From NCBI GenBank assembly GCA_024679065.1, contig JAGIQG010000009.1, positions 107,570,001 through 107,634,000 of the forward strand: a DNA stretch of 64,000 bases, read 5' to 3'. A program made the translations under genes and the position numbers. The stretch is from Sphyrna mokarran (lineage: Eukaryota). This document shows positions 27,296-55,602 of the stretch, piece after piece (within the stretch, counting starts at the first letter, position 1; every line of letters begins with the position of its first letter). Under the pieces are notes generated by a model, which ran no database searches, was not told the origin of the DNA, and was given only the letters and a program-made list of their open reading frames with translations.

Positions 27296-27498
27296 TTAAC
27301 CGATTTCCAAGTAACATTTCCAGGATGAATCAACCTCCTCTCGACCTGAATTAAATGACGCAGGAGAACCTCGAGAATCGTAGAAATGTACGAGAGATAT
27401 TGTTATAATGATGACCACAGCAAACACTGCAAGTTTCACTCCCATCACAAGCAGCTTACGAACTAACGATTCTCCGCTGTTATTCGGTTGCTTCTGGT
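27296..27498 (-). CDS. Gene B stalk/TM/cytoplasmic terminal exon (TM Lys)
   Basis: ccttctccatag|AC CAG... encodes HQKQPNNSGESLVRKLLVMGVKLAVFAVVIIITISLVHFYDSRGSPASFNSGREEVDSSWKCYLEIG*. Confidence 0.88.
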
Positions 27499-36435: not shown

Positions 36436-36484
36436 TGTGTAAAGCAAGAGCAACAATGTCAGTAAAATCTAAGCTAGTAGGTTA

Positions 36485-36490
36485 TTTATT
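36485..36490 (-). terminator. Candidate poly(A) signal of gene C
   Basis: AATAAA about 90 nt after the TAG stop on the minus strand. Confidence 0.5.
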
Positions 36491-36579
36491 CATCTTTCCA
36501 ATGGATATTGGACATCAAATTAACTGGTTAAAATTGACAAAATGCTTTCCATTAAAGAATGGACATGTTAAAACAGACG

Positions 36580-36834
36580 CTACACTCTCACTCTCCCGTA
36601 CACTGTTTGTTCTTCATTCCTTCCTCGGGTTTCCAAAGACTCCAACGGAATTGAAGCCTTCAATGGTGCGTACACAACAGATTCTTCACTGCTGTCTGGG
36701 AGTGGCGTCGCCCGAGTCTCTCTTGGCTTTTTCCTCTGAACCGGTGCCCTGACCCTCTCATACACAGTCCTGTCAGTAGGCGGGCGGCTGATGTTCAGCT
36801 TTGCATAGACGAGAGTTTCCGATATGTCTTCCTC
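36580..36834 (-). CDS. Gene C terminal exon with ITIM-ITSM-ITIM-ITSM
   Basis: ctaatttaag|GAG GAA GAC... encodes EEDISETLVYAKLNISRPPTDRTVYERVRAPVQRKKPRETRATPLPDSSEESVVYAPLKASIPLESLETRGRNEEQTVYGRVRV*. Confidence 0.88.
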   Translation of the reverse strand, partial: EEDISETLVYAKLNISRPPTDRTVYERVRAPVQRKKPRETRATPLPDSSEESVVYAPLKASIPLESLETRGRNEEQTVYGRVRV

Positions 36835-39800
36835 CTTAAATTAGCATAAAGAACAATGAGAAGAACAGCACAGGAACAGGCCCCTTGACCTTTCAAGCGC
36901 AGGTCATGATGCCTGAACTAAACTAAAAAACTCTCCTACCTTTATTCGGTCCGTATCTCTCCATTCTCTCCCTATTCCTGTACTCATCCAAGATGCCTCT
37001 TAAGTATTACTAATGTGTTTGCTTCCGTCACCTCCTCCAGCAGCCCGTTCCAGACACCCATCGGGCCCTGCCGGAATAAAACCTCCCCCCCCCCACATCT
37101 CCTTTAAACTTTCTCTTCCTCCCCCTGAATCTGTGCCCCTTCGTAATTGACACTTCCACCCTTGGAAAAAGACCCCGACTATTTACCCTGCCCAAGCTTC
37201 TCGTAATTTTGTAGATCTCTATCAGGTGTCTCCTCAGCCTCCGTCTTTCCAGTGAAAATAATCCTAGCTTATCCACCTCTTCTAATTTCCAACACCCTCG
37301 CGACCAGGCAACATTCTGATGAATTAAGGAGATGATTTATTCCAAAATGTGATAAGAAGGACGATCAGATCACCCAGGTTATGAAGTATACAAACGATAC
37401 TGCAGTATCACTAATGTTTAATTCTACTGAGCTATTGGTATTGGTTTCGATTAAAAAGTATTTTTCTCACATCACAAATACAATGCAGAGAAATCAATGT
37501 TACTTAAAATCCCGACGGTTTTGGCAAATAGCCATTGCAAGCATGTTCTGATATTTAGTTCGGATTGGGTTTCATCCCTAACAGTACTCCGGGTATGCCT
37601 ACATCTCAGGGACTTCCGACTTTCAAAAGAGCAACTCACTAGCACCTTCTGGATGGCAATTAGGGATGGACAATAAATGTTGGCCTAGCAGCGACGCCCC
37701 TATCCGCTAAACAAATTAAAACAAATGAACCGTGTTCGCTATTCATGATCTGCTGAAAATAATTTCCATAGCTTCATTCACAGCAGCATACATGCAGTGC
37801 TTTGCACTGTTGACTCACTACAGGAGAGAGCCGGGTTCGGTTCCAGCCTTGGGTGACTGTGTGGGTTGTGCACGTTCTCCCCGTGTCTTCGTGTGTTCCC
37901 TCCAGTGCTCCCGCTTCCTCCTATAGTCCAAAGATATACTGGATAGGTGGATTTGCCCTGTTAAATTGTCCTTTAGTGTCAAAAGATGTGTAGGTTATGT
38001 AGATTATCTATGCTAAATTGCCGCTTAGTGTCCAAAGATATACAGGTTAGATGGATTGGCCATGTTAAATTGCCTTTTAGTGTCTAAAGATATGTAGGTT
38101 AGCGGTATCAACGGGTGTAAGTAAATGGAGTTACAGAGATTGGATGAGGGAGGGGGGTACTGAATAAGATGCTCTTCGGAAGGTTGGTGCAGACTTGATG
38201 GACTAAATGAGCCTCCTTCTACAGTGCAGCGATTCTATGAATAGAATTATGCAAAAGTTAGTGATATCATAAAAAGGATATTCTTTTCTGGCTGTTGCCG
38301 AAAAAAAACACACATTCAAAGAAATCTTTCGTTAATGATCGCCGTACAATCATTATGAGTGTCGTTTTCCAGTGGCCAGTTGGCATTCATCGTGGGAATT
38401 GGACAGTTAGCTGGTAAACTGATCAGTATGTTTCCCCAATTTGACGCTGCCGATTACGTACAGGGCAAAAAATCTCAATTTGAATTCGTAATCGGTTGCA
38501 CGAAAGGTTTTGTAAGTTCTAGTAGGTCAGCACTCTGTCGCCTTCGAGACTGAAGTTCAGTTGAAGCCTACAGCGGTGAGCCGAAGGCGCAACTGAGTCT
38601 CAACTTTGCGAGTGTCAACCTTGCCCTGTACTGTGTGGCACAAGCAACAGCTGGAGCTGTAATGCCTTGCTGGAGACGATTTGCAGAGAATGCAGTCTCT
38701 ATATGCAGTCTATAGCCATACCAGTCTGAAAATGCCCAATCTAGTCTGATTTTGGAAAGCTAAGCAGACTCAGGTCTAGTTAGTACTTGGATGGGTGACT
38801 TTCTGGGAATACCAGATGCAGAGAGCTTTTGGTGGCACAGCGGTTAGCACGGATGCCTCACAGCACCGGGGACCTGGATTTGATTCTCACTTGGGTCACT
38901 GTCTGTGTGGGGTTTGTACTTTCTTCCCGTGTATGCAAGCGTTTGCTGCCGTTCCCTCCCGCACTCCAAGGATGTGCGGGTTAGGTGGATTAGCCACGCT
39001 AACTTGCCCCTTAGGAGTGGGGGGGGGGGTTAGTTAGGAGAAATGCATGAGGTTATAGGGATGTAACCTGAGTGGGATTGTGGTCGGTGCAAATTCGATG
39101 GGCCAAATGGCTTCCTTCTACACTGTAGATTCTATGATTTAAATAGTCTGCATGAGGATGTCACTGAAATCAGGTCTATTTAACATTAACTTTCCAAATG
39201 CAAAAAAGAAACAAACTATCATCAAAATTGTTTGCTGGCCATTCGCTGAATATGAAGAAGGAAGAAACTATCTTGATTAAGATGAGAACAGAGAGGCTGG
39301 GCAAATTTTGGAGAGAGAATTGATAAACATGACTTGGTATTGTTCATGGCTCGGTGTGTAGGGAAAGTCAGGAAAAGTAGTAGTCAAGTTAATGATTGAT
39401 TTGCATCAGGGATTGAAATGTTTGCATTCTTGTGGGTTGATGACCAGTGAATAAGGATGTCGTCTATTCTTCAGTGATATCGAATAAGATGCTTATTTGC
39501 AGCCAATGTGGATGTTGCATGTTTTTTTATTAATTCGTGGGACGTAGGCGTCGCTGGCTGGCTATTTATTTTCCATCCCTTGCTGCCCGAGGGCAGTTGA
39601 GAGTAAACCATATTGCTGTGGCTCTGGAGTCACATGTAGGCCAGACCAGGTAAGAATTTCCTTCCTAAAAGGACCTAAAACCACATGGACAATCGACCAT
39701 GGCTTCATGGTCATCAGTATGTTCTTAATTTCAGATTTTTTGGAACTTAGTGTGAAATTCCGGGATTCGAAGCATCATCCACAGAAGATTAGTTGAGCTT

Positions 39801-42800
39801 CATGGATGGAGAGTCTAGAAATAACACCAGTAGGCAGTCGCCTCCCCACATCTCACTCTTACCTCGGCCCCGCCCTATGTAAGGAGCAAAAGGATGGATA
39901 GAGGCAAGATTGGACCTCTCAGGGACAGAGGAGGGGATCTATGCTTAGAGCCTGAGGGAATGGGGGAGATCCTGAATGAATACTTTGTGTCGGTATTCAT
40001 GCAGGAGACTGGCCAGATGTCTGTTGCTGATTTTGACAAAGTTGAGGATCTGTTGAGGGAAATAAAGATTACGAGGAAAGAGGTGTTGGGGCTGTTAGGC
40101 AGCTTAAAGACATATAAAGCTCCGGGACCTGATGGCATTTACCCCAGGCTGCTAAGGGAGTTGAGGGAAGACCTAGCTGGGCCTCTGACGCAAATTTTTG
40201 TCTCTTCCTTGGACACAGGTGAGGTCCCAGAGGACTGGAGGATAGCAAACGTAGCACCGTTGTTTAAAAAAGGTCAGAGGGATCACCCAGGGAACTATAG
40301 GCCGGTGAGCTTGACTTCAGTTATAGGTAAGCTAATGGAGAGGATCCTCAGAGACAGGATGTATGAGCATCTGGAGCGCTGCGATCTGATCAGGGATATG
40401 CAGCATGGCTTCGTCAAGGGGAAGTCTTGTCTTACAAATCTAGTGGAATTTTTTGAAGAAGGGACAAAAACAGTTGATGAAGGACATGCTGTTGATGTCG
40501 TCTACATGGATTTCAGTAAGGCGTTTGACAAGGTTCCTCATGGTAGACTGATAGAGAAGATGAAGGCGCATGGGATACAGGCCCAGCTATGTAGATGGGT
40601 CGAGAACTGGCTCGGGAGGAGGAGACAGAGGGTAGTAGTGGAAGGCTCTTTTTCTGACTGGAGGCCTGTCACTAGTGGAGTGCCACAAGGCTCAGTACTA
40701 GGTCCTCTTCTATTTGTGGTCTACATAAACGACTTGGAAGTAGGGGTAGGTGGTGAGATCAGCAAATTTGCTGATGACACCAAGATGCTGGGATTGGCGG
40801 GTACAGAAGAGCAGTGTCAGGCAATACAACAGGACATAGACAGGTTGGTAGACTGGGCAGATAGATGGCAAATGGAATTTAATCCGGATAAATGCGAGGG
40901 GATGCATTTTGGCCGGAAAAATGTAGAAGAGAGTTATAGGATAAAAGGTAAAACTATTCGGAGTATAGAGACGCAGAGAGACTTGGGGGTGCAGGTTCAC
41001 AAGTCTCTGAAGGTGTCTTTACAGGTGGAGAAGGTGCTAAAGAAAGCGTATAGTATGTTAGCTTTCATAGAAAAGGGTATAGAATACAAGAGTAGGAGTT
41101 TGATGTTGCAGTTGTATAGAACTTTGGTTAGGCCTCACTTGGCATACTGCGTCCAGTTCTGGTCGCCGTACTATCGGAAGGATGTGGAGTCCTTGGAGAG
41201 AGTGCAGAGGAGGTTTACCAGGATGCTGCCTGGTATGGAAGGACTGTCTTATGAGGAACGATTGAATAGACTGGGGTTGTTTTCCCTTGAAAGACGTCGG
41301 CTTAGAGAGGATCTAATAGAGGTGCATAAGATTATAAGAGGTATAGATAGAGTAAATGGTGGTAAACTTTTTCCACCTTCAGAAATGAATAGGACGAGGG
41401 GTCATGGCCTTAGGGTGAGGGGGGCTACGTATAAGACGAATATTAGAGAGCAGTTTTTCACACAAAGGGTAGTGGGGGTGTGGAATGCACTGCCGAGTAA
41501 GGTGGTGGGAGCAGGCACGCTAAGACTGTTTAAGGGTCTCTTGGACAGCCACATGAGCGGTATGCAGATAGAGGGATATAGTAGGACTGTTTAACTATGA
41601 CTTTTTTTTTCACAGGTAATTCGGTCCAACTTGACCAACAAGGAGCATGCATTCGGCAGGTGGTGCGAGGACAGCTCTTGGATGTTGATTCATGGGTTGC
41701 CTGGTGCTTCATGTCGTAAATGAGTGCTTTATCTGGACCACCTGAAGGGCACCATGACAGCTACAGCGATAGTCACTGAGCTGTGCAGACACTTGGAATT
41801 GGGCCGGTGTCTGCGGGAGTTTGCGCATTCTCCCTGTGGTTGCGTGGGTTTTCTCCGGGCGCTCTGGTTTCCTCCCACATCCCAAAAATTCGCTCTTAGG
41901 CTGATTGGGAAACAAATTGACCCTATATTGAGATTCTTCCATATTAGGAATAACCTAAAATTAGAATAAGAAAATGGAATTGTTACTATAAAGTTATGAC
42001 GGCGGCGCGGGCTCATTGGGCCGAAGGGCCTGTTTCCCGTGCTGTGTTGCTCTTTGACTTCTTTGACTATAGAAAGCATTGGGTTAGCACAACCATTCGG
42101 TAACAGACGGTGGACTAATTTCGCCAGCTATGCAGCTCGATGATAAGTTGCACATCTCTCTCAATGTTCCTTACCTACTGCAATCTATTTGCCGTAACCA
42201 AAGCCAGAGCTCTTAAGAAACACGAACTTTAGATGTTATTTGTCTCGCTCCATACTAATCATTTATACTATCATGTTTCCCTGAATCTAGAATCTTATTA
42301 CTTAACCTAGCTTTAGAGTAATGGCGATTTATCACAGTACAAATCAAGAGTGCGAATCAAAACATGGTACATACCTCTTTTACTGTTTGGGCTCCATTTC
42401 TTTTACCTATAAAGTGTATTAAATAGATTAGATTTTAAAACTGGAACATAATTCGCAATCCTAGTATGAAAGCCAATAGTAAATTAAAATTTTCAGACCG
42501 AAATATATTTCTTCATTATCATAGAATACCAAGAGTGCAGAAGGAGACCATTCGGCCCATCAAGTCTGCACGGACCACAATCCCATCCGCCCCATTCCCG
42601 TAGCCCCATGCATTTACTCTGCGGGTCGCCCTGGCACTAAGGGGCAAATTAGCATGGCCAATCAACCTAACCCGCAAATCTTCGGACTGTGGGAGCAAAC
42701 CAGAATATCCGGAGGAAACTCACACAGACGCGGTAAGAATGAATAAACTCCACACAGACAGTGACTCAAGCCATGAAGTGAACTCGGGTCCCTGGCGCTG

Positions 42801-45800
42801 TGAGGTAGCAAAGCCACCACGTCTGGTGACTTTAGTTTTTACTTTTACAAATCATATTATTTCTAACTCACCGTCATTAATTTTGCATGTGACTTTTAAA
42901 ATTTAGATCATTTAAGAGTAAGATTGCCTTTGGAGCAAATTATTTAAACTAATGAGGTTTTCTAAGCTGAACAAGGTAACTTTTTGATATTTTGCAATTT
43001 CGATCACCACGCTGTAATTTTATGAATTCTAAAAATAACATCTAATGCAATGTAGTGCCGCAGTGATGATTTTTCATTGTTGCAGTTTGGACGGTCTCGT
43101 ACTTTTGACTCTCCTGTCGTTCCCTGTTCCATCTCTACTCCACTCCGCTCCTCTTCCTACTTTAAAATTATCTTTTTCAAATTAGTATATTGCAAGCAAC
43201 GCCTAACATGTTCACGTGTGTTTCGTTGTTACTTTTTGCCTGAAGTACATTGACAATAGCGTCAACTTTATTTTATTCCCCCTTGTTGGTCACCAGGATT
43301 AAACATTTAGAGACCGTCCTGCTGTTAGAGCTTCGCAGGAACAAATCTTAAAGGTGCAACAATGTGAGTGGAGATCGCATTAAGCATAGGTTAAAGAGAT
43401 GTGTATTGTCTCCAGATAGGGCACTAAGTGAGATGTTGCTAGTTCAGGCAAGTCATGGAGGTTACAGATAGTTTGACATGAACCCAAGATCCTGGTTTTC
43501 CCTTCCTGTTGGTGAACACTTCAGCAGTCATGGGCATTCAGCCTCTGATCTTCAGTAAACGTTCTCCAAGGCCGCCTTCACGACAGCACAGAGTCACTAA
43601 GCAGAAACTGATAACCAAGTTCCGCACACATAAAGACGGCCTCAACTGGGATCTTGGGTTCATGTCAGATCATCTGTAATCCCCATGACTTGCCTGGGCT
43701 TGTAACATCTCACTTATGTCCTGTCCGGAGACAATACACATCTCTTTAACTTACGCTTAATGCTATCTCCTCTCACATTGTTTGCACCCTTAAGACTTGA
43801 ATAGCAGATTAGCTGTAAAGACTCACATTCTAATGAATTTTCTGTAAACTTGTATGCCTTTATATGCCCTGTGTGATCAGAACTCTCCACTCACCTGACG
43901 AAGGAACAGCGTTCCGAAAGCTGGTGGAGTTTACTATCAAATAAACCTGTTGGACTTTAACCTGGTGTTGTGAGAGTTCTTCTTGTGTTTATCCCAGTCT
44001 AACGCTGGCATGTCCACGTTATGACTCCTATGAGATAGCCAGTTACTTACCTAATTGCCCAAATTTCTCTCTAAGCCCACACCTCCTTACTTTCTTCATG
44101 AGCTGACCATGGGAAACCTTATCAAATGCCTTACCAAAAACTGCTCTACTTTCATCTACGCACTTAGTTACTTCCTCAAAGAATTCAACCAAATTTGTGA
44201 GGCAAGACTTATCCTTCACAAATCCATGTCGACTATCCCAGATTAAGCTGCATCTTTCCAAATGTTCATAAACACTATCCATCAGGACCTTTTCCATTAT
44301 ATTACTGACTACTGAAGACTAACCAGCCTATAATTACCAGGGTCTTACTACCCTTCTTCAAAACAGGACCAACATTTGCCACTCTCCAGTCCTCTGGCAC
44401 AATTCCTGTGGACAGTGAGAACCAAAAGATCAAAGCCAAAGGCTTTGTAATCTCATCCTAGGATATATCCCATCTGGCCCAGAGGACTTATCAACCCTCA
44501 GATTTTTCAAAATTGATAATTCCCTCAGAACATCTACCTCCTCCAGCCTATCAGCCTGTATCACATTCTCATCTTCAAAAACATGGCCCCTCTCCTTGGT
44601 GAACACAACTTCATTTGTCGCCTCTCCCATATCTTCTGACTTTATGTGCAAGTTCCTACTACTATCCTTGAGCCGTCCAAACCTCACCCTGGTCATTCTT
44701 TTATTTCTCACATAAGTGTAAATAGCCTTGGGGTTTTCCTTGATCCGACCCACCAAGGATTTCTCATGCCCGCTCCTACTTCTCTTAATCCGTATTTTTG
44801 AGCTCATTCCTTGCTACCTTGTAACCCTCAAGCGAGCCAACTGAACTTTGTTTTCTCATCCTTACATATGCTTCCTTTTTCCTCTTGACAAGACATTCAA
44901 CCTCTTTTATTAACCATAGTTCCCTCACTCGGCCATTTCTTCCCTGCCCGACAGGAATACACCTCTCAAGGACAAGTATTTGTTCCTTGAACTAGCTCCA
45001 CTTTTCATTTGTGCCTTTCCCTGACAGTTTCTGATCCCATCTTTTGTTCCTTAATTCTTGCCTCATCGCATCATAATTACCCCTCCAATTATAAACCTTG
45101 CTCTGCTGTATAGCCCTACCCCTCTTTATTGCAATAATAAACGGCACCAAAATATAGTCAGAATCTCCAAAGTGCTCTCCACAAACAAATCTAATATTTG
45201 GCCCGGTTCATTACCAGTACCAAGTCCAACGTGGCCCCACCACTTGGCCTATCCACATACTCTGACAGGGAACCCTTTTGCACACACTGTACAAAAATTG
45301 CGCCATCCTAATTATTCAACGTATAAAAGTTCCAATCAATATTCAGAAAGTTAAAGTCACCCATGACAACTGCCCTGTGACTTCCACACTTATCCATGAT
45401 CTGCTTTGCAATTTCTTCCACCGCATCTCTATTATTATTTAGCGGCCTATAGAAAACTCATAACAACGTGACTGCTCCTTTCTTGTTTCTAACTTCAGCC
45501 CATATTATCTCAGTAGGCAGGTCCTCTTCGAACTGCCATTCTGCAGTTTTTAAACTATCTTTGATTAACAATGCTACTCCTCCATCTCTTTTACCACCTT
45601 CCCTCCTCTTACTGAAACATCTATACCCCGGAATTTAAAACAACCATTCTATTCTTGTTCTAACCATGTCTCCGTAATGGCCATAACATCATAGTTCCAG
45701 TACAAATCCATGCTCCAAGTTCACCTACCTTATTCCAGGTGCTGTTCATCTATCTTATTGGGGATGCTAGTTCACCTACCTTATTCCACATGCTAGTTCA

Positions 45801-48800
45801 CCTATCTTATTCTGGATGTCTTACCAAAGCAGGGATCAGAAAAAAAAAACAAGTATGATATGAGGAACATCTTAATGCGTCGATTTGGAAAGGTAACATT
45901 CTGTCTGGTCAGTTATACCTCCAGAAGACGCTCACAAAATGATCCATGGAGTGAAAAACGATTCTTATGAGGAAGCGTTGAGGACTGTGGATATATAGTC
46001 CTTTCAGTTTAGAAGGATAAGGGAGGATCTTATTGAAACTTACAGGATACTATGGTAGTGTGGATGTGCAGATGATGTTTCCACTAGTAGAAAAAAATAG
46101 AACCAGAGAGCAAAACCTCTGGTTAAAGGGACGATCCCTTAAAACAGAGATGAGGAGGAATTTCTTCAGCCAGAGAGTGGTGAATCTGTGGAATTATTTG
46201 CCGCAGAAGATTGTGGAAGCCAGATCATTGAGTGTTTTTAAGACAGTGGTACACAGGATTTTGATTAATAAGGGAATCAGGGGTTATGGGGAAAAGGCAG
46301 GAGAATCAGGACGAGAAAAATATAAGCCATGATGAATGGTGGAGTAAATTCTATGGGCCGAGTGTCCTAATTCTGCTTCTATGTCTTTTGGTCTTATGGT
46401 CTTATACTGGGATTTTTAGTGGAGATAAAAGAAAGAGCAGAGAACTGCAATGGAATCGATGTAATTTATCAGGATTTTCTAAAGGAATTGATAAGATGTC
46501 TGGACTAATGAATAAGGCCAGAAAATGTGTATTTAAGGGATAGGTGCCAGAATGGCTCGCTATCTGACGTTGAGCCAGAAAACAGAGAGTAGAATGAAAG
46601 GGCAGTTATTCAGAATGAATAAAATTGTATTTCACAAGGATTAGTGTTGAGACTGCTGATGCTCGGTGCTTACATTAACAAATTGGTGTTGGAAGCAAAC
46701 ACACAATTTTTAAATTGCCCGATGACCCCACTTTGGGGTGAATCGCTAATATCGAGAAGGTCTCCAACAAATTGCATAGAATACTAACAATATTGAAGAA
46801 AGGGAAGTAAATTCGCAAACATTTAATGATAAAATGGTACATGTTACTAGGAAGAATAAAGAGGTAATTTATTGCCTGTAAGGTGCACGCCCAAGTGGGA
46901 TACAGGACCAGAAGAAATACATCAACCACTAAAGTTTGCTACAGTTGAACAAAGCAAGCCAAGTACTAGCCGTTATTTCTAGGGGAAGAGAATTAAAAGT
47001 AGGGAAATCACACTAAACCTGCATTGAATCTTTGTTAGACTGCACTTAGAATGCAGAGTATAGCTATGGTGGGCATGTTATGAAAATGATATAGAGACAC
47101 TGGAGAAGACGCAGAGAAGATATGCAAGGATGATATCAGAACCCCATAGGTATCAGGAACAATCATAAGAACATAAGAACATAAGAAATCGGAGCAGGTG
47201 TAGGCCATCTAGCCCTTCGACCCTGCCCTGCCATTCAATAAGATCATGGCTGATCTGAAGTGGCTCAGTTCCACTTACTCGCCTGCTCCCCATAACCCTT
47301 AGTCCCCTTATTGATCAGAAATCTATCTAACCATGACTTAAACATATTCAAAGAGGTGGCCTCTACCACTTCAATGGGCAGAGAATTCCAGAGATTCACC
47401 ACTCTCTGAGAGAAGTTCCTCCTCAACTCTATCCTAAACTGACCGCCCCCCCTCTTATTTTGAGGCTGTACCCCGTGGTTCTGGTTTCCTTTCTAAGTGG
47501 AAAGAATCTCTCTGCTTCTAACCTATCTAGGCCCTTCATTATCTTGTAAGTCTCTTTAAAATCACCCCCCAGCCTTCTAAACTCCAACGAGTACAGGCCC
47601 AATCTACTCAATCTTTCTTCATAAACTAACCCTCTCATCTCCAGTAACAGCCTTTGAACCTTCTCTGTACTGCCTCCAAGGCCAATATATTGTTTCGCAA
47701 ATAAAGAGACCAAAACTGCACACAGTACTCCAGTTGCGGCCTCACCAGTGCCTTGTACAGCTGCAGCAAGACTTCCCTGCTTTTATATTCTATCCCCTTC
47801 GCTATAAACGCCAACACTCCATTTGCTTTCTTGATCACCTGCTGTACTTGCAGACTGAGTTTTTGCGATTGGTGCACAAGGACCCCCAGGTCCCACAGTA
47901 GCATGCTGCAACTTTTCACCATTTAAATAATATTCCATCCTACTATTATTTCTTCCAAAGTGGATAACCTCAGATTTGCTAACGTTATACTCCATCTTCC
48001 AGGTCATTGCCCACTTAGTCAGCCTATCCAAATCTGTCTGCAGACTTTCCACATCCTCCATGCAATTCGCTTTTCCACTCACCTTTGTATCATCAGCAAA
48101 CTTTGTTACCCTACAATCAGTCCCCTCCTCCAGATCTCTATGTATCTTCGGTAAGGTAAATGGTAGGGTAGTATATGGTAGGGTTCTTCCCCCCCCCTCA
48201 GAAATTAATGTTTGAATGGTTACTGAAAACAGGAGTTTAAAAATTATGGGTAGGTTTGATGGAGTGGATATAAAGAGAATGATTCTTCTTGTGGGAAATA
48301 TATACATAGAATCAATATAATATGGTGGCAAAAAAATCCGATAGAGAATTCAGAAGAAACCCAAAAGCTGGTAAAAATATGGGACTTGTTACTACAGGGG
48401 GCTGGGTGGTACAAATAGTATAGACACATGTAAGAAAATAAGGGGAAAAGGCATGAATGGTTATATTGATATAATTAAATTTAAAAAGTTAGGAGGAAAT
48501 TTGAATAGATCACGAAGAGCAGTATGGATTAGTCAAGCTGGGTAGCCTGACTCTCCCACATATCCTATATAATTAATATCTACTTATGACACGAGCCATG
48601 ATATTTGCAGCTTCAAATGATACAAAGTTATAAATAATTTTCTAAATTTAACGTAACTAGTGGGCGGCATGGTAGCACAGTGGCCAGCATTGTTGCTTCA
48701 CAGCGCTAGGGTCCCAGGTTCGATTCCCAGCTTCGGTGACTGTCTTCGTGGATTCTCCCTGTATCCTTCGGTTATTTGGGCTTCCTCCCACATTCTGAAA

Positions 48801-51800
48801 GACTTGGTACTGCATTGACCTGAACAGGCGCTGGACTGTGACCAATAGGAGAGTTTCACAGTAACTTCAATATAGTTTTGATGCAAGCCTTACTTGTGAC
48901 TAATAAACTAACTAAAAATTCATTTTGGAAAATAAGAATATTCACGGAAATGCTGGTATTGCTGCAACTTTCAATCATGCTGATTATTGCAGAGACACTG
49001 TAGGTGTACAACAATGTAAACCATAGGTCAGCCACGTTGTTCTTCAGACATATAGTCATTCATGCCTTGCAGGAAAGAAATGGGTATAAAGTTCTCATTC
49101 CACGTCGTAAAATAGAATGAATTCAGAATAATTACCTGGTGGTCCACTGCATTGCCAAATATAAATTATTTTAGTTAGGATGACAGCGAGTACCACAAAA
49201 ACCAGCACCGAGAAAATAAGCAGATATATGTTCCATTGGCTTGGAGGTGTTGTCACATCAGAATCAACATGACCTTTAGAAAGAAAACAACAGTAAAACA
49301 TGCCTTTCTTTCCATCTGCTACAGTGTTTTTGATGGGGTTGGGGGGAGTTATTCTGGACTTCGTACTTCAGCTGAGAAACCGCAGTTTCAGCCTCTCGAT
49401 GCGCACAGCCCCAAGCTAATGAGCAGAGAAGTCAAAATAATGTGTCAACCACAATCCCTATTTGTGTATGGGTGATGACCATTGCTGGTCGTCCATTTTG
49501 TTTGAAAACAAAGTAACTTAAGATGAGAGATAAGAGCATTGATGCAGAATGGCAGGCAGATGGTGAGCAGATAAAGCCTTTAGAACATATCAGTTCTGGG
49601 AACACAAGATTTCTTCAGAAATTGTTTGATTCATTGTAGGGGGATGGTGGAGTGAGCAGTTGTACAACATTCTACACAACTGTCTCCCCTCCCCCCACCC
49701 ACCTCCCCAACCGCCCACACATTCCTCTCTCGTATTTCTGGGCATACAACTAAATTATTTCTTTTCCATTTGCTGCAGCTTTAATTCTTATTGCTATATT
49801 TTGCCATCCCTGAGGATATCTCGAGTTCTGACTCAGCAGCCAGCTGGACACAATGAATATCCCAAATATAAAAAGGTTGAGATGTCTTTAGCTTTGTTGC
49901 TACAGCAAATGACGATCTATGTTCTTGCTGCCTTGTTTTAATTTCTGCTTTTGGAGAGGAAAGGGTGTTCCAATACTATGTTTGCCTATTTCACCAATAC
50001 AGCATTCTAATATCAGACATGTAGAAAGAGAATGATCTAGTGAATCTCACCTAACTAGAATCCTCCTTTCTATTCTGACTTGTTTCGTTCAAATTCATGG
50101 AATGATGATTCCTAATAGCGAGCAGTTATACTGTCGTCAATAATGCAAAATAAGGATCTCCAAATCAAGTTTACTTTTCTGTAACTTCTTTATATTAGGT
50201 TATTCTGGAAATGAAGTTCGTACAGTTTCACCCATTCCACTGTAATTGGTCGTGGTTAACAAGGGGATCAGCTTTATGGTAAGCAAGCGGAATTTAAAGT
50301 TGGATCCACAATTCAATGATTAGCTATTACTGTTCCTATTTCGCTATCTTGTGTTTATGCAACAGCAGGTGGGTATTTTTGTCGAATGCATCATGAACCT
50401 ACAGCTTTAATAACTATGCCTACCTACATGGCTATTAATCCTGAAACCCAGTTATTGTTCTGGGGACCAGGGTTCGAATCCCACCACAGCAGGTGGTGGA
50501 GTTGAATTCGATAAAAAAAAAATTAAGAATGTACTGATGACCATGAAACCATTGTCTATTGTTGAAAAACCCCATCTGGTTCATTAATATTCTTTAGGAA
50601 AGGAAGTCTGCCGTCCTTGCCTGTTTTGGCCAATATGTGACTCTAGAGCAACAGCAATGTGGTAAACTCTCAACTTCCCTCTGAAATGGCCGAACAAGCC
50701 ATTCTGTTATATCAACGTTTCAACAAGGCAGTTCACCACCTTGGTAGTAAAGTAGTTTATGGTAGTATATGGTAGTAAAAAAAAACTTGTAAAGTGCAGT
50801 ATTCGATAGGGCAACTCACTTGAAGTTGAAAGTTCCCAGGGATGGTTGAGATGCATCCCTGAATTGTCGAGAGGGCAGGAATCATGGGGGTACAGGAAAT
50901 GTATGAATTAAAATTAAGTTAGTGTCATGGATTGCAGTCTGCTCTCATGGGCTGCTGCGATTCACGGAGGCAGAGCAACACCATCTTCTCAATGGCAACT
51001 AGAGATGGGCAATAACTTCTGGCCTAGTCAAAGACACCCATGTCCCACGAATGAATTTTTAAAAAGTGTTGGTGTAACAAGTAGACTTATATTAGCACTG
51101 CAATAAAGTTGTTATGAAAATCCTCTATGAGGGTATATGTACAGAAATCGATGGAATTACCAGGGCGTGTTGAGAAAGTGGTTTGCAAGGCATACAGCAA
51201 CCAAGGCTTTATGAACAGAAGCACTGAATGCAGAAGTAAGGATGCTATGGCGATTTTAAAAAAAAACTTAAACGCCAGTTAGGCTTCAACTGGGGCATTG
51301 TTCCCAATTCTGGGTGCCAAACTTTCCAAAACGATGTTAAGGCTTTGGGGAGTATGCAGAAACGATTTACAAAAATATTTCCAGATTTGAAAGACTTCAA
51401 TATGTGGATAGATTGGCGAACCCGCTAGGCTTGTTTCTCCTCGAAGGACAGAGATTAAAAAGAGATTTCATAGAGGCATTCGCGATCATGACAGTCTGGA
51501 TAGACGAGTTGGAGTCAAATTGCTCTCTGATATAATAGTGTCGAGAAGGAGATGAGATGGATTTCAGGTGATCCGCCAACAAGGATATGACGAAACTAAA
51601 GCATTCATCTCACGTACTGAGTGGTTAGGACCTGGAATCCACTGGTTCAGAGTGAGTAGGAGGCAGCTAGTTCTGAGTTTTAAAAAAGAAGTAAATAAGA
51701 ATCTAACGTTCAAAATAGAATGTGATACGGTTTCAGAAAAGTGTCAGGGATTGGAGCACATTGTGTTGCTTTAGAGGTGAGCTTGTACAACAAGCATGCA

Positions 51801-54800
51801 TAGACACGGGGGCTGAAACCATTGCATGGTGTTGTGACTGTGCTTTATACCTGGCCCAGAATTCCCCTCCACTATTGTAGAAGCATAGTGAACCCGGACA
51901 GAGTGAAACCCCAAGGGCTGCATCCGATCCCGTCAGCATTCAATTTGTGTGGGCAAAACACAGAGTGGGGGACTTCCAATCTGCGGGTGGATTAATTATC
52001 CCTAGTTCCCATTTACCTGTCTATTTGTAAGGAATGTGAAGCTACAGGTGCAACACAAACTCACCATTTACTGTGACATTTGTTCCTTCTCCGGTCCCGT
52101 TTCCGCCGATCACAAGCTCCACATCACAGTAATACTTCCCTGTGTCGTTCAGGTTCACATTGGTTATCGATATGGATGCGGTTCTGAATTCGTAGAATGA
52201 AGATGCATGAGAATTCTGAACACGTCCGATATATTCTGTGCAGTTGTTGCAGACTTTACGGGTTCGGGAATCTTTATACCAAGTGACTGAACCAACGGCT
52301 CCGTTTCTTGAATCGGTTGCATTCTCACTGAAGTTACAATACAGATGGAAGGTGCCGCCTTCTTTTACGCTAATAGAGTTCGGTGTTTGCTTGACTGTGA
52401 CTCTAGAGTCAGTAGCTCCTGTAAACATAAATTTATATCTTCATTAACATCCAGGCCACTTCACATTGTTGGTTTTGAGTTACAGAAACATTGGGCTCTG
52501 AAATGGTTATCACAGCTAACAGCAACAAGCAGTTCAGTTACACAACTGGTCATTTTAATGCTTCAGTTTTCTGAAGAAGGGTCATTGATTTATGACATGG
52601 TGACACAGTGGCCTCACACTGCTAGGCACCCGGGTTCTATTCCCGGCTTGGGTCACAGTCTGTGCGGAGACCGCACCTTCTCCCTGCCCCTGCGTGGGTT
52701 TCCTCAGTGTGCTCCGGTTTCCTCCCACAATCTGGAAAGATGTGCTGGTTAGGGTGCATTGGCAATTTTGAATTACTTCATTGCAGTGTTAATTTAAGAC
52801 TACTTTGAAACTAATAAGTAAAATTAACACTTAAGGTTAAAAGATCCTGGCCGCCATTCTTTGGCCGTTCACACTTTCGGGATTCTCCGGCCGATTTCTT
52901 TCTGGCATAGGTGACATCAATGAGATATATTTTTCATTCGTTCATAGGACATAGTCATGGCTGGCTGGGTCCACATTTATTATCCATCCCAAGTAGCCCG
53001 AGGGTAGTTGAGAGTCAACTGCACTGCACTGCTATGCTCTGAAATCCCACGAAGGGCAGACCAGGTAAGAACCGGCAGATTTGCTTTTTGTTTTGTGGTG
53101 TTTTTTTGTGTGGTGGTTTTGGTGTGGTTTTTTGGTTTTTGTTTGGTTTTGTGGTTTGAATTTGGAATTCGGACCAGGGTCCCCACATTAGCTGAGTTTC
53201 TGGATTCATAGCCTAGAGAAAATACCGATAGGCCATCGCTTCCCAATTGATAGCGGTGGCACCAGTGAATCCCGCCGCTGGCAAAAAAAGCGCCACTACC
53301 CGCCTGCCAGAATCACATGGCTTGGAGGGCGGACAATCTCTCTCCTGTCTCCCTGTTTCTCGCCAACCTTTGCCCGACCTGAGTGTACACTGGGTACTCC
53401 CTGAATTCCGATTAATATATATTTTCCAGCTTTATTTCTGTTATGCAGTCTGTTGTTTGAGACTTTTCTTTCTACCGCTCAAACTAATCCACAAATAAAG
53501 AGGGGCAATGAGACTGAAGCTGGCCTTCCTTTAATGGGAATTGACTTTAGTCAGTTTTAACTGGGCTGTCGGCAGGTGCTGCAGAACAACTGAAGCCTAT
53601 ACTTGCAAATATTTCATTGGCTCCACTATATTGCCGAAAGCAAATCAGAAGGGTGAATATTACGCTTTATTGCAAATGTTATCTTACACTAGCTGGGAGT
53701 GTTAAATAACAAACTAGGCGCGTATAAAACAAACTTAAATTATAATTCAAATTGTAGGAAAATCTGTTCTTTTTGAGCAAGCGGTCAAGCGAACTCCAGG
53801 TTTTCACTCCAGCCAGCGAGTCGAAAATGTTAGGTCTTAGTGATTACCTGTCTTTTTTTTAAAGGCAGGCTCATCTTATGCATATAAAGACAAATTGTAA
53901 TGTCCATACAATCACAAAGATAGAAACAGGATCAATAATTCTTATCATTCTCTACCTTTGCTTGCTAGACTGTAACTCTAGAGTCGGTAACTCCGGTAAA
54001 CATGCAATAGTCGCGCCACGCTACATTGTTGCTCCGAGCTTTACATGCAAGGAAGAGTTGCAGCTCCTTCTCTGCACAATCGTCAAAGGGCGACAAGGAA
54101 TAAGAAACCTGTGACATTGCATGAATAAATAACCTTGATTCACAGGGCACAATTTTCTAAAGTTGTGGAGCATAAAAAAATTGAAAGCATTGTGAGGATA
54201 GCGGTGGAGTTCCAAATGGCATATGGACAGTTTGCTGGAACCGGAGGTTAAATGGCAGATTTAATTTAACGCAGAGAATTGTGAAGTGATTCGTTTTGGT
54301 AGGAAAAAAACACGAAGAGACAGGAGAAAAATAAAGGGTCCAAGTCTGTAGGAAAAGAGCCACCCCGATGTGTATGGAGAGGAGGTGGCTGTTAATGAAA
54401 TATACAGCATTTATTAATGGGGCACAGAGGTTATGTAAAATAATATTTTGGTCATCGCATAGGAACGTAGAAAATAGGGGCAGGAGTGTGCACTATAGCC
54501 TTTCCAGCCTTTCATTATATTAATTGCTGATCATCCAACTCAGTGCCCTATTCCCGCCTCTCTTCTACATTTAGCCTTAAGAGCTACATCTAATTCCTTT
54601 TTGGAAATATTAATGTTTTGCATTAAACTGCCTTCTGCGCTAACGAAGTCCACGGGATCACCAGCCTCTGAATGAAGAACTTTCCCCTCATCGCACCCTT
54701 AAACTGTTTACCGTGTATCCCTTAGGCTGTGACCCCTGGTTCTGGATACCACATTATCGGGAATATCCCTTCCTGCATTTACCCTGTTAGAATATTATCG

Positions 54801-55602
54801 GTATTTATAAGATCACCCCACATTTTTCTAATATCCATCTAAACTCTTCTGTGATCCGAATCTCACCCCACACGCCATTCTGGCATCCCAAAAATGATTT
54901 GGATAGATTGAAGAAATTACGAAAAAGATTCACGAGAATGGTTCCACGGATGAAGGGTTTCAGCTACTTGCCCGCAATTCCTATGTGTGTGCGTGTGTGT
55001 CTATGTCTGTCTGTGAGCATGCATGTGTGTGTGTTTATGTGTATGTCTGTGTGTGTGTATATGTGCGTTTCAGTGTATGTGCCCATATGAGTGTATATGT
55101 GTTTGAGTGTATGGATGNNNNNNNNNNNNNNNNNNNNNNNNNNNNNNNNNNNNNNNNNNNNNNNNNNNNNNNNNNNNNNNNNNNNNNNNNNNNNNNNNNN
55201 NNNNNNNNNNNNNNNNNNNNNNNNNNNNNNNNNNNNNNNNNNNNNNNCGTGCATGCATACCTGTGCTTGCGGATGTGTGTGCGTGTGTGCAATATGTTTA
55301 TGCATATACATTTATATATCTATATGAAATACGTATCTGAATAATACAGATGATATATTTACTGATGTTTGTATCGATGTCTCTGCGTGAAATATTTAAA
55401 TGTTTGTTTCTAATATAAGTTGATGTATAATATACGTATATATGGCTGCATAAATCTCGATAACAAGTACCTGTGTGGATGTGTAACAGTGTCTGTGCGT
55501 GTGTGCATACATATGTTTATTCATAGACACATGAGAGAGCCCGGGCGCAGATTACTTACCAGAGAGCAACAGATACGACCAAACGATTCTATTGCATAGC
55601 AT
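36580..55602 (-). CDS. NCR3-like: Gene C: NKp30/NCR3-like single-IgV inhibitory-type receptor with 2 ITIM + 2 ITSM; coding exons 55560-55602, 52065-52418, 49136-49273, 42375-42406, 36580-36834; 273 aa
   Basis: All five exons are GT-AG with compatible intron phases (1,1,1,0), giving 822 nt in frame. The V domain closely resembles human NKp30 as recalled (AVGSVTWYKD vs AIGSVTWFRD; GNGTGEGTNVTV vs GVGTGNGTRLVV). Confidence 0.82.
36846..37322 (-). mobile_element. CR1 3' fragment abutting the gene C terminal-exon acceptor
   Basis: ORF 37028-37276 (LGLFSLERRRLR); the tail is cctgttcctgtgctgttcttctcattgttctt. Confidence 0.85.
38708..38830 (+). pseudogene. 5S rRNA pseudogene (full length, diverged)
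   Basis: GTCTATAGCCATACCAGTCTGAA...AAGCTAAGCAG...GTTAGTACTTGGATGGGTGAC...TGGGAATACC...GCTTTT aligns end to end with vertebrate 5S rRNA, with many substitutions. Confidence 0.85.
39877..42066 (+). mobile_element. CR1 LINE, 5'-truncated and young (open 566-aa ORF2 segment with RT), including 3'UTR and tail
   Basis: ORF 39894-41594 has KAPGPDGI, NYRPVSLTS, QHGF, YMDFSKAFDKV, SGVPQGSVLGP and KFADDTK. The 3' tail is gggccgaagggcctgtt...ctttgacttctttgact. Confidence 0.95.
42375..42406 (-). CDS. Gene C 32-nt cytoplasmic mini-exon
   Basis: cactttatag|GT AAA AGA AAT GGA GCC CAA ACA GTA AAA GAG|gtatgt. Phase 1->0 is exactly what is needed to join the TM exon to the ITIM exon. Confidence 0.65.
43345..44025 (+). 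mobile_element. Penelope-like element with inverted pseudo-LTR segment and hammerhead-like core
   Basis: 43345-43497 is an inverted copy of ~43644-43797. CTGACGA...GAAA core at 43895-43919. Confidence 0.8.
44040..45745 (-). mobile_element. CR1 LINE internal fragment (endonuclease to RT, degraded)
   Basis: ORF fragments IKENPKAIYTYVRNKR, KSSGPDGIYPR and HGFVKDKSCLTNL. Confidence 0.88.
45719..45818. repeat. Four copies of a ~26-bp tandem unit at a CR1 5' junction
   Basis: gttcacctaccttattcc...tgct(a) repeated four times. Confidence 0.8.
45940..46405 (+). mobile_element. CR1 LINE 3' end
   Basis: RRNFFSQRVVNLWN motif and ggtcttat tail. Confidence 0.8.
46430..47150 (+). mobile_element. Old degraded CR1 RT fragment
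   Basis: Remnants such as aaattgcccgatgacc (KFADD-like) and ttgttagactgcacttagaa (LVRPHLE-like). Confidence 0.6.
47162..48145 (-). mobile_element. CR1 LINE 3' fragment
   Basis: KFADDTK and LVRPQLEYCVQFWS motifs, with a (cttatgtt)n tail. Confidence 0.9.
49136..49273 (-). CDS. Gene C stalk/TM exon
   Basis: ttttctttctaaag|GT CAT ... CCA G|gtaatt. Encodes HVDSDVTTPPSQWNIYLLIFSVLVFVVLAVILTKIIYIWQCSGPP, phase 1-1. Confidence 0.85.
52065..52418 (-). CDS. NCR3-like: Gene C VJ-type IgV exon
   Basis: Boundaries atgtttacag| and AAT G|gtgagt. Encodes VTVKQTPNSISVKEGGTFHLYC..GSVTWYKD..YIGRV..ASSFYEFRTASISI..DTGKYYCDVELVIGGNGTGEGTNVTVN. Confidence 0.95.
53959..54003 (-). pseudogene. Short dead duplicate of the start of the gene C V exon
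   Basis: atgtttacCG GAGTTACCGACTCTAGAGTTACAGTCTAG compared with the real exon start atgtttacAG GAGCTACTGACTCTAGAGTCACAGTCAAG. Confidence 0.7.
54982..55330. repeat. (TG)n-rich repeat containing an assembly gap (N at 55118-55247)
   Basis: 130 N flanked by TG repeats, inside the leader-V intron of gene C. Confidence 0.95.
55560..55602 (-). CDS. Gene C leader exon
   Basis: gccATG CTA TGC ... CTC TCT G|gtaagt (MLCNRIVWSYLLLS), phase 1. The acceptor tttgttcacag lies 13 nt upstream of the ATG. Confidence 0.85.

What the first reader, a model, noticed from the sequence alone, without database searches (positions are those of the whole stretch)
36580..55602. NKp30-like V domain joined to a double ITIM+ITSM tail (checkpoint-like receptor)
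Seen: the terminal exon, only partly captured by the ORF track, encodes LVYAKL (ITIM), TVYERV (ITSM), VVYAPL (ITIM) and TVYGRV (ITSM), with Tyr-to-Tyr spacings of 15, 30 and 24 residues. A 32-nt phase 1->0 mini-exon at 42375-42406 links it in frame to the TM exon. Established: ITIM-then-ITSM order with roughly 24-25 residue spacing, as in PD-1 and SIRPalpha, engages the tandem SH2 domains of SHP-2/SHP-1, and ITSMs can also bind SAP/EAT-2. Inference: this is an inhibitory or switchable NKp30 homologue that, if it binds a B7-family ligand, resembles a PD-1-like checkpoint receptor.
Basis: partly seen in the sequence, partly recalled or inferred. Interest (0 to 1): 0.82.

Follow-up and report, generated by a model that had tools for sequence, protein, structure and literature searches.

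The report
Inhibitory NKp30-like shark receptor gene
This is an apparently intact gene for an immune-cell surface receptor of the NKp30 family whose tail carries "off-switch" tyrosine motifs; it sits beside two "on-switch" sister genes and is one more member of a receptor family already predicted in many sharks and rays.

Summary
On the minus strand there are five exons. They have canonical AG/GT borders and compatible phases:
- leader 55602-55560
- V 52418-52065
- TM 49273-49136
- 32-nt mini-exon 42406-42375
- tail 36834-36580

The tail has four tyrosines, all inside ITIM or ITSM consensus motifs, spaced 15, 30 and 24 residues apart. The N gap lies in the leader-V intron, inside a CA-rich repeat, and touches no coding sequence.

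The V domain is closest to human NKp30 by sequence and by predicted fold. The leader, V, TM, mini-exon and tail are collinear with RefSeq models from horn shark and bamboo shark. The tail is also homologous to tails in three rays, so the gene model is supported by homology. No RNA run could be listed, so splicing is not shown.

Only the last tyrosine is present in all six tails compared. The second tyrosine (TVYERV) occurs only here. The threonine that makes the last motif an ITSM is found in just one of the five relatives.

Two neighbouring genes in the window have Lys or Arg in the TM segment, which marks them as activating. The best reading is therefore the inhibitory partner in a paired NK-type receptor cluster, not a PD-1-like checkpoint.

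Unchecked notes of this scan describe the same kind on other DNA of this genome. Verdict: new member of a known kind, of modest interest.

The parts
55560..55602 (-). Leader exon: ATG at 55602, 43 nt, phase 0 to 1, donor GTAAGT. It encodes MLCNRIVWSYLLLS.
   Evidence: It ranks 1st of 50 ATG..GT phase 0>1 candidates between 52.4 and 60 kb for similarity to the N-termini of six relatives (summed score 182 against 116 for the next).
55118..55247 (.). Assembly gap (130 N) inside the leader-V intron, within CA-rich simple sequence. It is not coding.
   Evidence: Relatives show no residues between the leader and the V domain.
53959..54003 (-). A 45-bp decayed copy (87% identity) of the 5' end of the V exon, lying in the leader-V intron. 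Its acceptor AG is lost and it has an in-frame stop.
52065..52418 (-). V exon: 354 nt, phase 1 to 1. It encodes a VJ-type V-set Ig domain with Cys27, Trp46, YYC and a J-like GTGEGTNVTV.
   Evidence: Pfam V-set E 8.6e-13. Best PDB sequence hits are the four NKp30 sequences at E 2.1e-11 to 2.7e-11, with the next hit at 6.9e-5. The AF2 model has pLDDT 89.3, and the top 4 Foldseek hits are all NKp30.
49136..49273 (-). Stalk and transmembrane exon: 138 nt, phase 1 to 1. The hydrophobic core NIYLLIFSVLVFVVLAVILT has no charge, and one Lys sits at the cytoplasmic edge.
   Evidence: BLASTP against P0001 residues 134-177 gives E 6.6e-15, and against P0003 residues 134-178 gives 3.5e-10.
42375..42406 (-). 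A 32-nt mini-exon, phase 1 to 0, encoding (G)KRNGAQTVKE. It is needed to bring the tail exon into frame.
   Evidence: It ranks 1st of 356 stop-free AG..GT phase 1>0 candidates of 17 aa or fewer in the 12.3-kb interval for similarity to the juxtamembrane segments of 4 relatives. It fills exactly the 11 residues of P0001 that lie between the TM and tail matches. Skipping it gives a stop after 20 codons.
36580..36834 (-). Terminal coding exon: 84 codons plus TAG. It contains LVYAKL, TVYERV, VVYAPL and TVYGRV.
   Evidence: BLASTP to the C-termini of relatives: P0003 E 1.0e-11, P0001 2.4e-10, P0033 3.6e-8. Alignment.
36485..36490 (-). AATAAA, starting 90 nt after the stop codon. It is a candidate poly(A) signal.
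   Evidence: This is a pattern match only.

Best explanation
The span 55602-36580 (minus strand) is one apparently intact five-exon gene. It encodes a type I membrane protein of the elasmobranch NCR3 (NKp30)-like multigene family. The protein has a signal peptide, one non-rearranging VJ-type V domain, a short stalk and an uncharged transmembrane helix. Its cytoplasmic tail is about 95 residues long and has four tyrosine motifs.

It is the inhibitory-type member of a local tandem cluster. The two downstream paralogues (V exons at 28.9 kb and 13.5 kb) carry Lys or Arg in the TM segment and have short tails, which is the activating type.

Inferred mechanism (not shown here): ligand binding by the V domain brings the tail near Src-family kinases. 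The phosphorylated ITIM-type tyrosines then dock the tandem SH2 domains of SHP-1/SHP-2-type phosphatases. Tyr1, Tyr3 and Tyr4 are the ones shared with relatives, and Tyr3-Tyr4 are 24 residues apart. The phosphatases damp signals from ITAM-coupled receptors such as the neighbouring paralogues.

Shown here: gene structure, domain identity, motif presence and tail homology. Inferred: expression, splicing, phosphorylation, phosphatase recruitment and ligand.
For: - Exon borders and phases are consistent.
- The V domain is closest to NKp30 by sequence and by fold.
- The nearest proteins among 1.84 billion representatives are RefSeq 'natural cytotoxicity triggering receptor 3-like' XP_067865303 from Heterodontus francisci (P0001, 61% identity in V) and XP_043533738 from Chiloscyllium plagiosum (P0003, 59%).
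- Both relatives are collinear with all five exons of the window gene.
- The tail is homologous in 2 sharks and 3 rays. Tyr4 is present in 6 of 6 aligned tails, and Tyr1 and Tyr3 each in 4 of 6.
- Four motifs arise by chance in only 5 of 200,000 shuffles.
- The two neighbouring genes have K or R in the TM, and no second tail exon or K/R-type TM exon lies in this gene's territory.
- On a V-domain tree of 83 rows, ITIM-type and K/R-TM-type labels interleave, needing 16 and 17 changes. This is what a paired-receptor family would show.
- ITIM-tailed NCR3-like models also exist in a newt, the axolotl and a bichir.
- Both ITIMs have Ala at pY+1, the SHP1-favouring state in human receptors (abstract of PMC8631942).
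Against: - There is no transcript evidence. No RNA run was listed, so read laying could not be used.
- The supporting relatives are computational RefSeq models.
- The closest relative, P0001, has His, Cys and Ser in place of Tyr1 to Tyr3, so strong constraint on the full motif set is not evident.
- The clade winA+P0001+P0003 has only SH-aLRT 87 on a quick tree of 116 columns.
- The tail exon lies 12.3 kb from the TM exon, across introns that hold LINE fragments.
- A Lys sits at the inner edge of the TM segment.
Confidence: 0.72

Rival explanations
1. The receptor is a switch or checkpoint. The two TxYxxV motifs would be true ITSMs that bind SAP/EAT-2-type adaptors as well as SHP-2. The receptor could then change sign with cell state, like SLAM-family receptors, or act as a PD-1-like checkpoint on T cells through a B7-family ligand.
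For: Two exact TxYxx[VI] matches are present, TVYERV and TVYGRV. The distal ITIM-ITSM spacing of 24 is close to the 25 between PD-1 Y223 and Y248 (abstract of PMC7078208). Both PD-1 motifs bind SHP2 together (abstract of PMC6994217).
Against: Thr at -2 of the last motif is shared with only 1 of 5 relatives; the other four have I, V, F and V. Tyr2 is unique to this gene: three relatives have Cys, one has His and one has a gap. Among the 97 hits of 340 aa or fewer that were scanned, only 2 carry a canonical ITSM in the tail, against many with ITIMs. The V domain is NKp30-like, and no chain named PD-1 is among the 60 best of 94 PDB sequence matches. The activating paralogues next door fit a paired NK-type system.
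Confidence: 0.15
2. The gene model is wrong or the gene is dead. The tail exon would be a relic that is no longer spliced to the V-TM exons. The functional product would then be a short-tailed receptor, or there would be no product.
For: There is no RNA evidence. Read-through past the TM exon donor reaches a stop after 13 further codons, counting the split Gly codon (ORF 49095-49301). Skipping the mini-exon gives a stop after 20 codons. Introns are long and repeat-rich. The nearest relative has lost three tyrosines.
Against: All five exons are open, with canonical splice sites and matching phases. Every tyrosine of the tail sits in a motif, which 5 of 200,000 shuffles reach. The mini-exon and the leader each rank first among candidates. 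A relic would be expected to carry stops or frameshifts, as the 45-bp V remnant at 53959-54003 does.
Confidence: 0.1
3. The tail exon belongs to another gene and was joined to the V-TM exons only by proximity.
For: The tail exon lies 12 kb from the TM exon and 7 kb upstream of the next gene's leader.
Against: The tail exon lies upstream of the leader of gene B (29339), so it cannot be B's 3' exon. No other V, TM or leader exon was found between 49 and 36.6 kb. In P0001 and P0003 the same tail type follows the same V and TM types.
Confidence: 0.03

Closest known systems
Elasmobranch NCR3 (NKp30)-like family: RefSeq models XP_067865303 (Heterodontus francisci), XP_043533738 (Chiloscyllium plagiosum) and relatives in rays; nurse-shark NCR3 cDNAs of Kinlein et al. 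2021
   Same: The architecture is the same: leader, one VJ-type V domain with the VCNNCTEYIGRVQ segment, an uncharged TM segment, a KRxGxQ juxtamembrane piece and a homologous Tyr-containing tail. Identity in V is 61% and 59%. The neighbouring gene B is 67-68% identical in V to nurse-shark NCR3 QTT61904.
   Different: This gene has four tyrosine motifs, whereas the horn-shark protein keeps one and the bamboo-shark protein keeps three tyrosines. Tyr2, in TVYERV, is seen only here. The Kinlein paper could not be read. Whether it already describes ITIM-bearing members is not known to me; I recall only its abstract, which does not mention them.
Mammalian NKp30 (NCR3), PDB 3NOI / 3PV6 / 6YJP
   Same: NKp30 is the best solved relative of the V domain by sequence (E 2.1e-11 to 2.7e-11 against 6.9e-5 for the next hit). 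It is also best by fold (TM 0.76-0.82, 34-36% identity, top 4 of the Foldseek list). Both have a single V domain and a VJ-type G-x-G motif.
   Different: Mammalian NKp30 is activating. It has an Arg in the TM (seen in P0079, P0148, P0139 and P0092) and a short tail. Its coupling to CD3zeta/FcRgamma is recalled, not tested here. This gene has an uncharged TM core and a long tail with ITIM/ITSM motifs.
Paired activating/inhibitory IgSF receptor families (SIRPalpha/SIRPbeta, KIR, LILR, teleost NITR)
   Same: Related ectodomains are coupled either to a charged TM or to an ITIM tail, and the genes lie in tandem clusters. By recall, SIRPalpha also has four tail tyrosines arranged as two pairs.
   Different: The V-domain lineage is different. 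SIRPalpha V scores only E 4e-4 or weaker. The resemblance is functional, not a matter of membership.
PD-1 / BTLA (ITIM + ITSM checkpoint receptors)
   Same: Both have a single V domain, an ITIM followed by an ITSM, and a distal spacing of 24 against 25 in PD-1 (abstract of PMC7078208).
   Different: The V domain is not PD-1-like. There are two further tyrosines. The ITIM pY+1 is Ala as in BTLA, not Gly as in PD-1 (abstract of PMC8631942). The ITSM is not conserved among relatives. The gene belongs to a multigene paired family rather than being a single-copy checkpoint gene.

Membership tests
NCR3 / NKp30 family (broad, vertebrate) | A single V-set Ig domain encoded by one exon, of the non-rearranging VJ type with a J-like G-x-G-T motif | tested here: met
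   One 354-nt phase 1-1 exon ends in GTGEGTNVTV. Pfam V-set E 8.6e-13. G109, G111 and V116 are invariant in a 30-sequence alignment.
NCR3 / NKp30 family (broad, vertebrate) | NKp30 is the closest characterised relative of the V domain | tested here: met
   By PDB sequence search the four NKp30 sequences score E 2.1e-11 to 2.7e-11 and the next hit 6.9e-5. In Foldseek ranks 1-4 are all NKp30, at E 3.6e-12 to 2.2e-11, and the next hit is 4.7e-9. The nearest database proteins are named NCR3-like by RefSeq.
NCR3 / NKp30 family (broad, vertebrate) | Linkage to the MHC | not testable with these tools
   There are no MHC genes in the window. An unchecked note of this scan places AIF1 next to an NKp30-like gene about 308 kb away. 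The published MHC linkage in sharks is recalled from the Kinlein 2021 abstract, which was not read here.
NCR3 / NKp30 family (broad, vertebrate) | Binds B7H6 | not testable with these tools
   There is no ligand gene in the window and no binding data.
Activating NKp30 of mammals (narrow) | A basic residue within the TM helix for pairing with ITAM adaptors, and a short tail | tested here: not met
   The TM core NIYLLIFSVLVFVVLAVILT is uncharged and the tail is about 95 aa. The feature is met by the neighbouring genes B (K) and C (R).
ITIM-bearing inhibitory immunoreceptors (functional class) | At least one [SIVL]xYxx[IVL] in the cytoplasmic tail of a receptor with an uncharged TM | tested here: met
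   LVYAKL and VVYAPL are present. Tyr1 and Tyr3 are each kept in 4 of 6 aligned tails, and Tyr4 in 6 of 6.
ITIM-bearing inhibitory immunoreceptors (functional class) | Tyrosine phosphorylation and SHP-1/SHP-2/SHIP recruitment | not testable with these tools
   This needs biochemistry.
ITSM 'switch' receptors (SLAM family, PD-1) | A conserved TxYxx[VI] that binds SAP/EAT-2 or SHP-2 | tested here: inconclusive
   The consensus is present twice. However, Tyr2 is unique to this gene, and Thr at -2 of Tyr4 is shared with 1 of 5 relatives. Binding was not testable.
CD28/PD-1 family | A V domain related to PD-1/CD28 | tested here: not met
   No chain named PD-1, CD28 or CTLA-4 is among the 60 listed of 94 PDB sequence matches. 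NKp30 heads both searches.

The most novel reading that the evidence does not exclude
Tyr2 (TVYERV) is a recent, lineage-specific gain at a position where three relatives have Cys. Any Cys codon becomes the matching Tyr codon by a single G-to-A change. The gain would turn an ancestral three-tyrosine ITIM tail into two ITIM-ITSM pairs, a SIRPalpha-like double docking site for tandem-SH2 phosphatases. This gene would then be a strengthened or switchable inhibitory partner for the two activating paralogues beside it, with inclusion of the 32-nt mini-exon acting as an on/off splice control of the whole inhibitory tail.
Probability: 0.15. Interest if true: 0.5.

Novelty: new member of a known kind. 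Interest (0 to 1): 0.3.

Why it matters
The finding adds a well-defined inhibitory member to the shark NKp30 family. It also shows, within one 64-kb window, inhibitory and activating forms side by side. That supports the view that paired NK-type signalling on an NKp30 scaffold is old in jawed vertebrates, because the homologous tails are shared by sharks and rays. The practical value is a clean exon map, including a 32-nt exon that gene finders easily miss, and a list of which tyrosines are conserved and therefore worth mutating first. It does not open a new mechanism.

Tried and rejected
RNA evidence: the look-up of sequencing runs (kind rna) on 36400-37000 listed no run. Read laying was therefore never called, and splicing is untested.

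I did not try it again and used protein collinearity instead.

Closer orthologues: the search for homologous proteins found almost nothing new. P0001 found only itself. P0003 residues 130-294 found only itself. P0072 found itself, one bamboo-shark orthologue and P0005. No closer orthologue of this gene was obtained, and no further nurse-shark NCR3 protein.

ESM Atlas search on the tail exon gave no usable hit.

Pfam on the tail exon found no family. The TM exon gave only a chance-level OSTbeta match at E 0.53.

Literature:
- Kinlein et al. 2021 (by DOI and as PMC8273117), Flajnik et al. 2012 (PMC3709836) and Ohta & Flajnik 2015 (PMC4594805) are not held.
- Four searches gave no held paper whose listed title or abstract start concerns ITIM-bearing NKp30 homologues in fish or amphibians. 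The searches were NKp30+shark+ITIM, NCR3+shark+NKp30, NKp30+ITIM+cartilaginous fish and NKp30+Xenopus+ITIM.
- I read passages only in PMC12227049, PMC10450919, PMC10751288, PMC11599192, PMC12272517 and PMC6514059. None describes such homologues.
- This does not show that the point is unpublished, because the key paper was unreadable. Supplementary files were not consulted.

The bacterial-type promoter and terminator scan is irrelevant to a vertebrate gene and was ignored.

Rejected ideas:
- A hidden exon in the N gap. The relatives leave no residues for one.
- A K/R-type alternative TM exon inside this gene, as an unchecked note reports for the next gene. None was found by tblastn with 21 family proteins.

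Limits of the counts and the tree:
- The tree is a quick tree on 116 columns. It used only hits of 340 aa or fewer with exactly one V-domain match, which is 80 of the 151 proteins held, plus 3 window exons. Multi-domain and long proteins were left out.
- In one search proteins longer than 340 aa were likewise left out.

Full report
**Observation**

The minus strand of 36834-36580 translates without a stop to 84 residues followed by TAG. The peptide contains LVYAKL, TVYERV, VVYAPL and TVYGRV. A script placed the four tyrosines at residues 10, 25, 55 and 79, giving spacings of 15, 30 and 24. It also confirmed that these are the only tyrosines in the tail. Shuffling the same 84 residues 200,000 times gave four motif matches only 5 times. 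In a six-frame scan of all 64 kb, the only other stretches with four matches were two translations of a simple repeat near 5.9 kb. The motif cluster is therefore real and is not a chance product.

**Gene structure**

Reading the sequence around each proposed exon gives five minus-strand exons (tabulated).

| Exon | Coordinates | Length | Phase |
|---|---|---|---|
| Leader | 55602-55560 | 43 nt | 0>1 |
| V | 52418-52065 | 354 nt | 1>1 |
| Stalk/TM | 49273-49136 | 138 nt | 1>1 |
| Mini-exon | 42406-42375 | 32 nt | 1>0 |
| Tail | 36834-36580 | 255 nt | 0>stop |

- Every acceptor is AG and every donor is GT.
- An AATAAA starts 90 nt after the stop.
- If the mini-exon is skipped, the tail exon is read in another frame and stops after 20 codons.
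- If the TM donor is not used, the frame stops after 13 further codons, counting the split Gly codon (ORF 49095-49301).
- The ITIM tail therefore depends on inclusion of the 32-nt exon.

**The assembly gap**

The only N run, 55118-55247, lies in the leader-V intron. It is flanked on both sides by CA-rich simple sequence. The relatives described below run from a 16-residue leader directly into the V domain. No exon is expected in the gap, and frame continuity across it is irrelevant. I made no attempt to fill it.

**Identity of the ectodomain**

- The V exon matches Pfam V-set at E 8.6e-13.
- Against all PDB sequences, the four NKp30 sequences lead at E 2.1e-11 to 2.7e-11. The next hit, an antibody heavy chain, is at 6.9e-5.
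- An AlphaFold2 model built on a 30-sequence alignment has mean pLDDT 89.3.
- The four best Foldseek matches in the PDB are all NKp30 (3NOI chains A and B, 3PV6, 6YJP). They score E 3.6e-12 to 2.2e-11 with TM 0.76-0.82. The next hit is at 4.7e-9.
- The domain has the canonical Cys, Trp and YYC, and a J-like GTGEGTNVTV. It is thus a non-rearranging VJ-type domain, as in NKp30.

**Relatives and support for the gene model**

Support comes from homology instead.

A full HMMER scan of 1.84 billion representative proteins with the V exon gave 240 hits at E of 0.001 or better.

- The best is P0001: 280 aa, 61% identity, RefSeq XP_067865303, 'natural cytotoxicity triggering receptor 3-like', Heterodontus francisci.
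- The third best is P0003: 294 aa, 59% identity, XP_043533738, Chiloscyllium plagiosum.

Searching exon by exon gave these matches:

- The TM exon matches P0001 residues 134-177 (E 6.6e-15) and P0003 residues 134-178.
- The tail exon matches the extreme C-termini of P0003 (E 1.0e-11), P0001 (2.4e-10) and P0033 (3.6e-8). P0033 is from the ray Hypanus sabinus.
- The 11 residues of P0001 left between the TM and tail matches (DKRTGTQVVSK) align with the mini-exon peptide (G)KRNGAQTVKE.
With longer candidates included it ranks lower on raw summed score (33rd of 604), because long candidates collect score by length.
- The leader ranks first of 50 candidates.

All five exons are therefore collinear with gene models from two other sharks. 

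**Conservation of the tyrosines**

A MAFFT alignment was made of the tail exon with the tails of P0001, P0003, P0033, P0037 (Hemitrygon akajei) and P0051 (Narcine bancroftii) (names).

| Position | Motif in window | Tails with Tyr | State elsewhere |
|---|---|---|---|
| Tyr1 | LVYAKL | 4 of 6 | His in 2 |
| Tyr2 | TVYERV | 1 of 6 (window only) | Cys in 3, His in 1, gap in 1 |
| Tyr3 | VVYAPL | 4 of 6 | Ser in 1, gap in 1 |
| Tyr4 | TVYGRV | 6 of 6 | - |

- The threonine at -2 of Tyr4, which makes it an ITSM, is shared only with P0001. The other four have I, V, F and V.
- P0001, the closest relative, keeps only Tyr4.
- The tail type is old, because sharks and rays share it.
- The 'double ITIM+ITSM' pattern is peculiar to this gene.
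It is not known, however, whether these proteins are orthologues or paralogues.

**Context**

TBLASTN of the V exon and of 21 family proteins against the window shows three NKp30-like genes in tandem, all on the minus strand.

- Gene B: leader about 29339-29298, V 28909-28565, TM exon about 27514-27329. Its TM reads LLVMGVKLAVFAVV, with a Lys. Its V domain is 67-68% identical to a nurse-shark NCR3 protein, QTT61904.
- Gene C: leader about 16074-16033, V 13529-13185, TM exon about 8158-7958. Its TM reads LITLGVRLAVFAVL, with an Arg.
- Both have short tails without ITIMs, which is the activating design.
- No second tail exon and no K/R-type TM exon lies between 52 and 36.6 kb. The tail exon is upstream of gene B's leader, so it can only belong to gene A.

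On a quick maximum-likelihood tree of 83 V domains, gene A groups with P0001 and P0003 (SH-aLRT 87, not starred). Gene B groups with the nurse-shark protein (99). ITIM-type and K/R-TM labels are interleaved, needing 16 and 17 changes. The tree rests on only 116 columns, and it excludes multi-domain hits and hits longer than 340 aa.

ITIM-tailed NCR3-like models also occur in a newt (P0036), the axolotl (P0124) and a bichir (P0113).

Family members share one large scaffold in the horn shark (P0001, P0083, P0042), the bamboo shark (P0003, P0158) and Hemitrygon (P0020, P0024, P0037).

Unchecked first-stage notes of this scan describe many further NKp30-like activating and inhibitory genes in the same genome. 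One lies just beyond this window and others about 10.7 Mb away. The scan has thus met this kind before on other DNA.

**Mechanism**

Shown here: an open five-exon gene, an NKp30-type V domain, an uncharged TM core, and a tail with ITIM/ITSM consensus motifs that is homologous to tails in other elasmobranchs.

Inferred from the general behaviour of ITIM receptors:

- The tyrosines are phosphorylated by Src-family kinases.
- The phosphorylated motifs dock tandem-SH2 phosphatases bivalently. The abstracts of PMC6994217 and PMC8631942 show this bivalent mode for PD-1 and BTLA.
- The result is inhibition of ITAM-coupled signalling.

The distal pair (24 residues apart) resembles PD-1 Y223/Y248 (abstract of PMC7078208). 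Both ITIMs have Ala at pY+1. [quoted passage not shown] If that rule carries over to sharks, the tail is closer to a BTLA or SIRPalpha type than to PD-1. That SIRPalpha has four paired tail tyrosines is recalled, not tested.

**Comparison and novelty**

The gene is a member of the broad NCR3/NKp30 family on the features I could test. It is not of the mammalian activating NKp30 type, because the charged TM residue is absent. It works most like the inhibitory half of a paired receptor family. Similar NKp30-like V plus ITIM-tail proteins are already present as predictions in RefSeq for several sharks, rays, amphibians and a bichir. This is therefore a new member of a known kind.

The main paper on shark NCR3 genes (Kinlein et al. 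2021) could not be read. I cannot say whether it already describes ITIM-bearing members. My four literature searches found no such description in the held library.

The most novel reading left open is that Tyr2 is a recent gain that creates a second ITIM-ITSM pair, with the mini-exon acting as a splice switch for the tail. I give this a probability of about 0.15.

Noticed in passing
window 27296-29339, minus strand: Gene B is a second NKp30-like gene: leader about 29339-29298, V exon 28909-28565, TM exon about 27514-27329. It has a Lys inside the TM (LLVMGVKLAVFAVV) and a short tail, which is the activating type. Its V domain is 67-68% identical to nurse-shark NCR3 QTT61904 (P0072).
   Followed up: partly
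window 7958-16074, minus strand: Gene C is a third NKp30-like gene: leader about 16074-16033, V exon 13529-13185, TM exon about 8158-7958. It has an Arg inside the TM (LITLGVRLAVFAVL) and a short tail. Its V domain clusters with proteins that carry either ITIM tails or K-type TM segments in other sharks.
   Followed up: partly
window 53959-54003, minus strand: A 45-bp, 87%-identical remnant of the 5' end of the V exon lies 1.55 kb upstream of the real exon. Its acceptor AG is lost and it has an in-frame stop. It is probably a relic of an older V-exon duplication.
   Followed up: yes
window 52245-52256 (V exon, residues 56-59 of the exon translation): There is an extra Cys pair in a CxxC arrangement (VCNNCTEY) where most family members have only an N-x-S/T sequon. 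P0001 and P0003 share it, and P0020 has a related form. It might form a small loop disulfide next to a glycosylation site.
   Followed up: no
window 39894-41594 (+), and 44043-44807 and 47429-48331 (-): A 566-aa reverse-transcriptase ORF of LINE type and further RT fragments lie within the introns of gene A. They explain the long TM-to-tail distance.
   Followed up: no
window 36832 onward and 49135-49095, minus strand: Skipping the 32-nt mini-exon shifts the frame and gives a stop after 20 codons. Read-through past the TM donor stops after 13 further codons, counting the split Gly codon. Either event would give a tail-less receptor, so splicing could in principle switch the inhibitory tail off.
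   Followed up: partly
other species (proteins P0001/P0083/P0042; P0003/P0158; P0020/P0024/P0037): Inhibitory-type and activating-type NCR3-like models share one large scaffold in the horn shark, the bamboo shark and the red stingray. The clustered, paired organisation therefore seems general in elasmobranchs.
   Followed up: no
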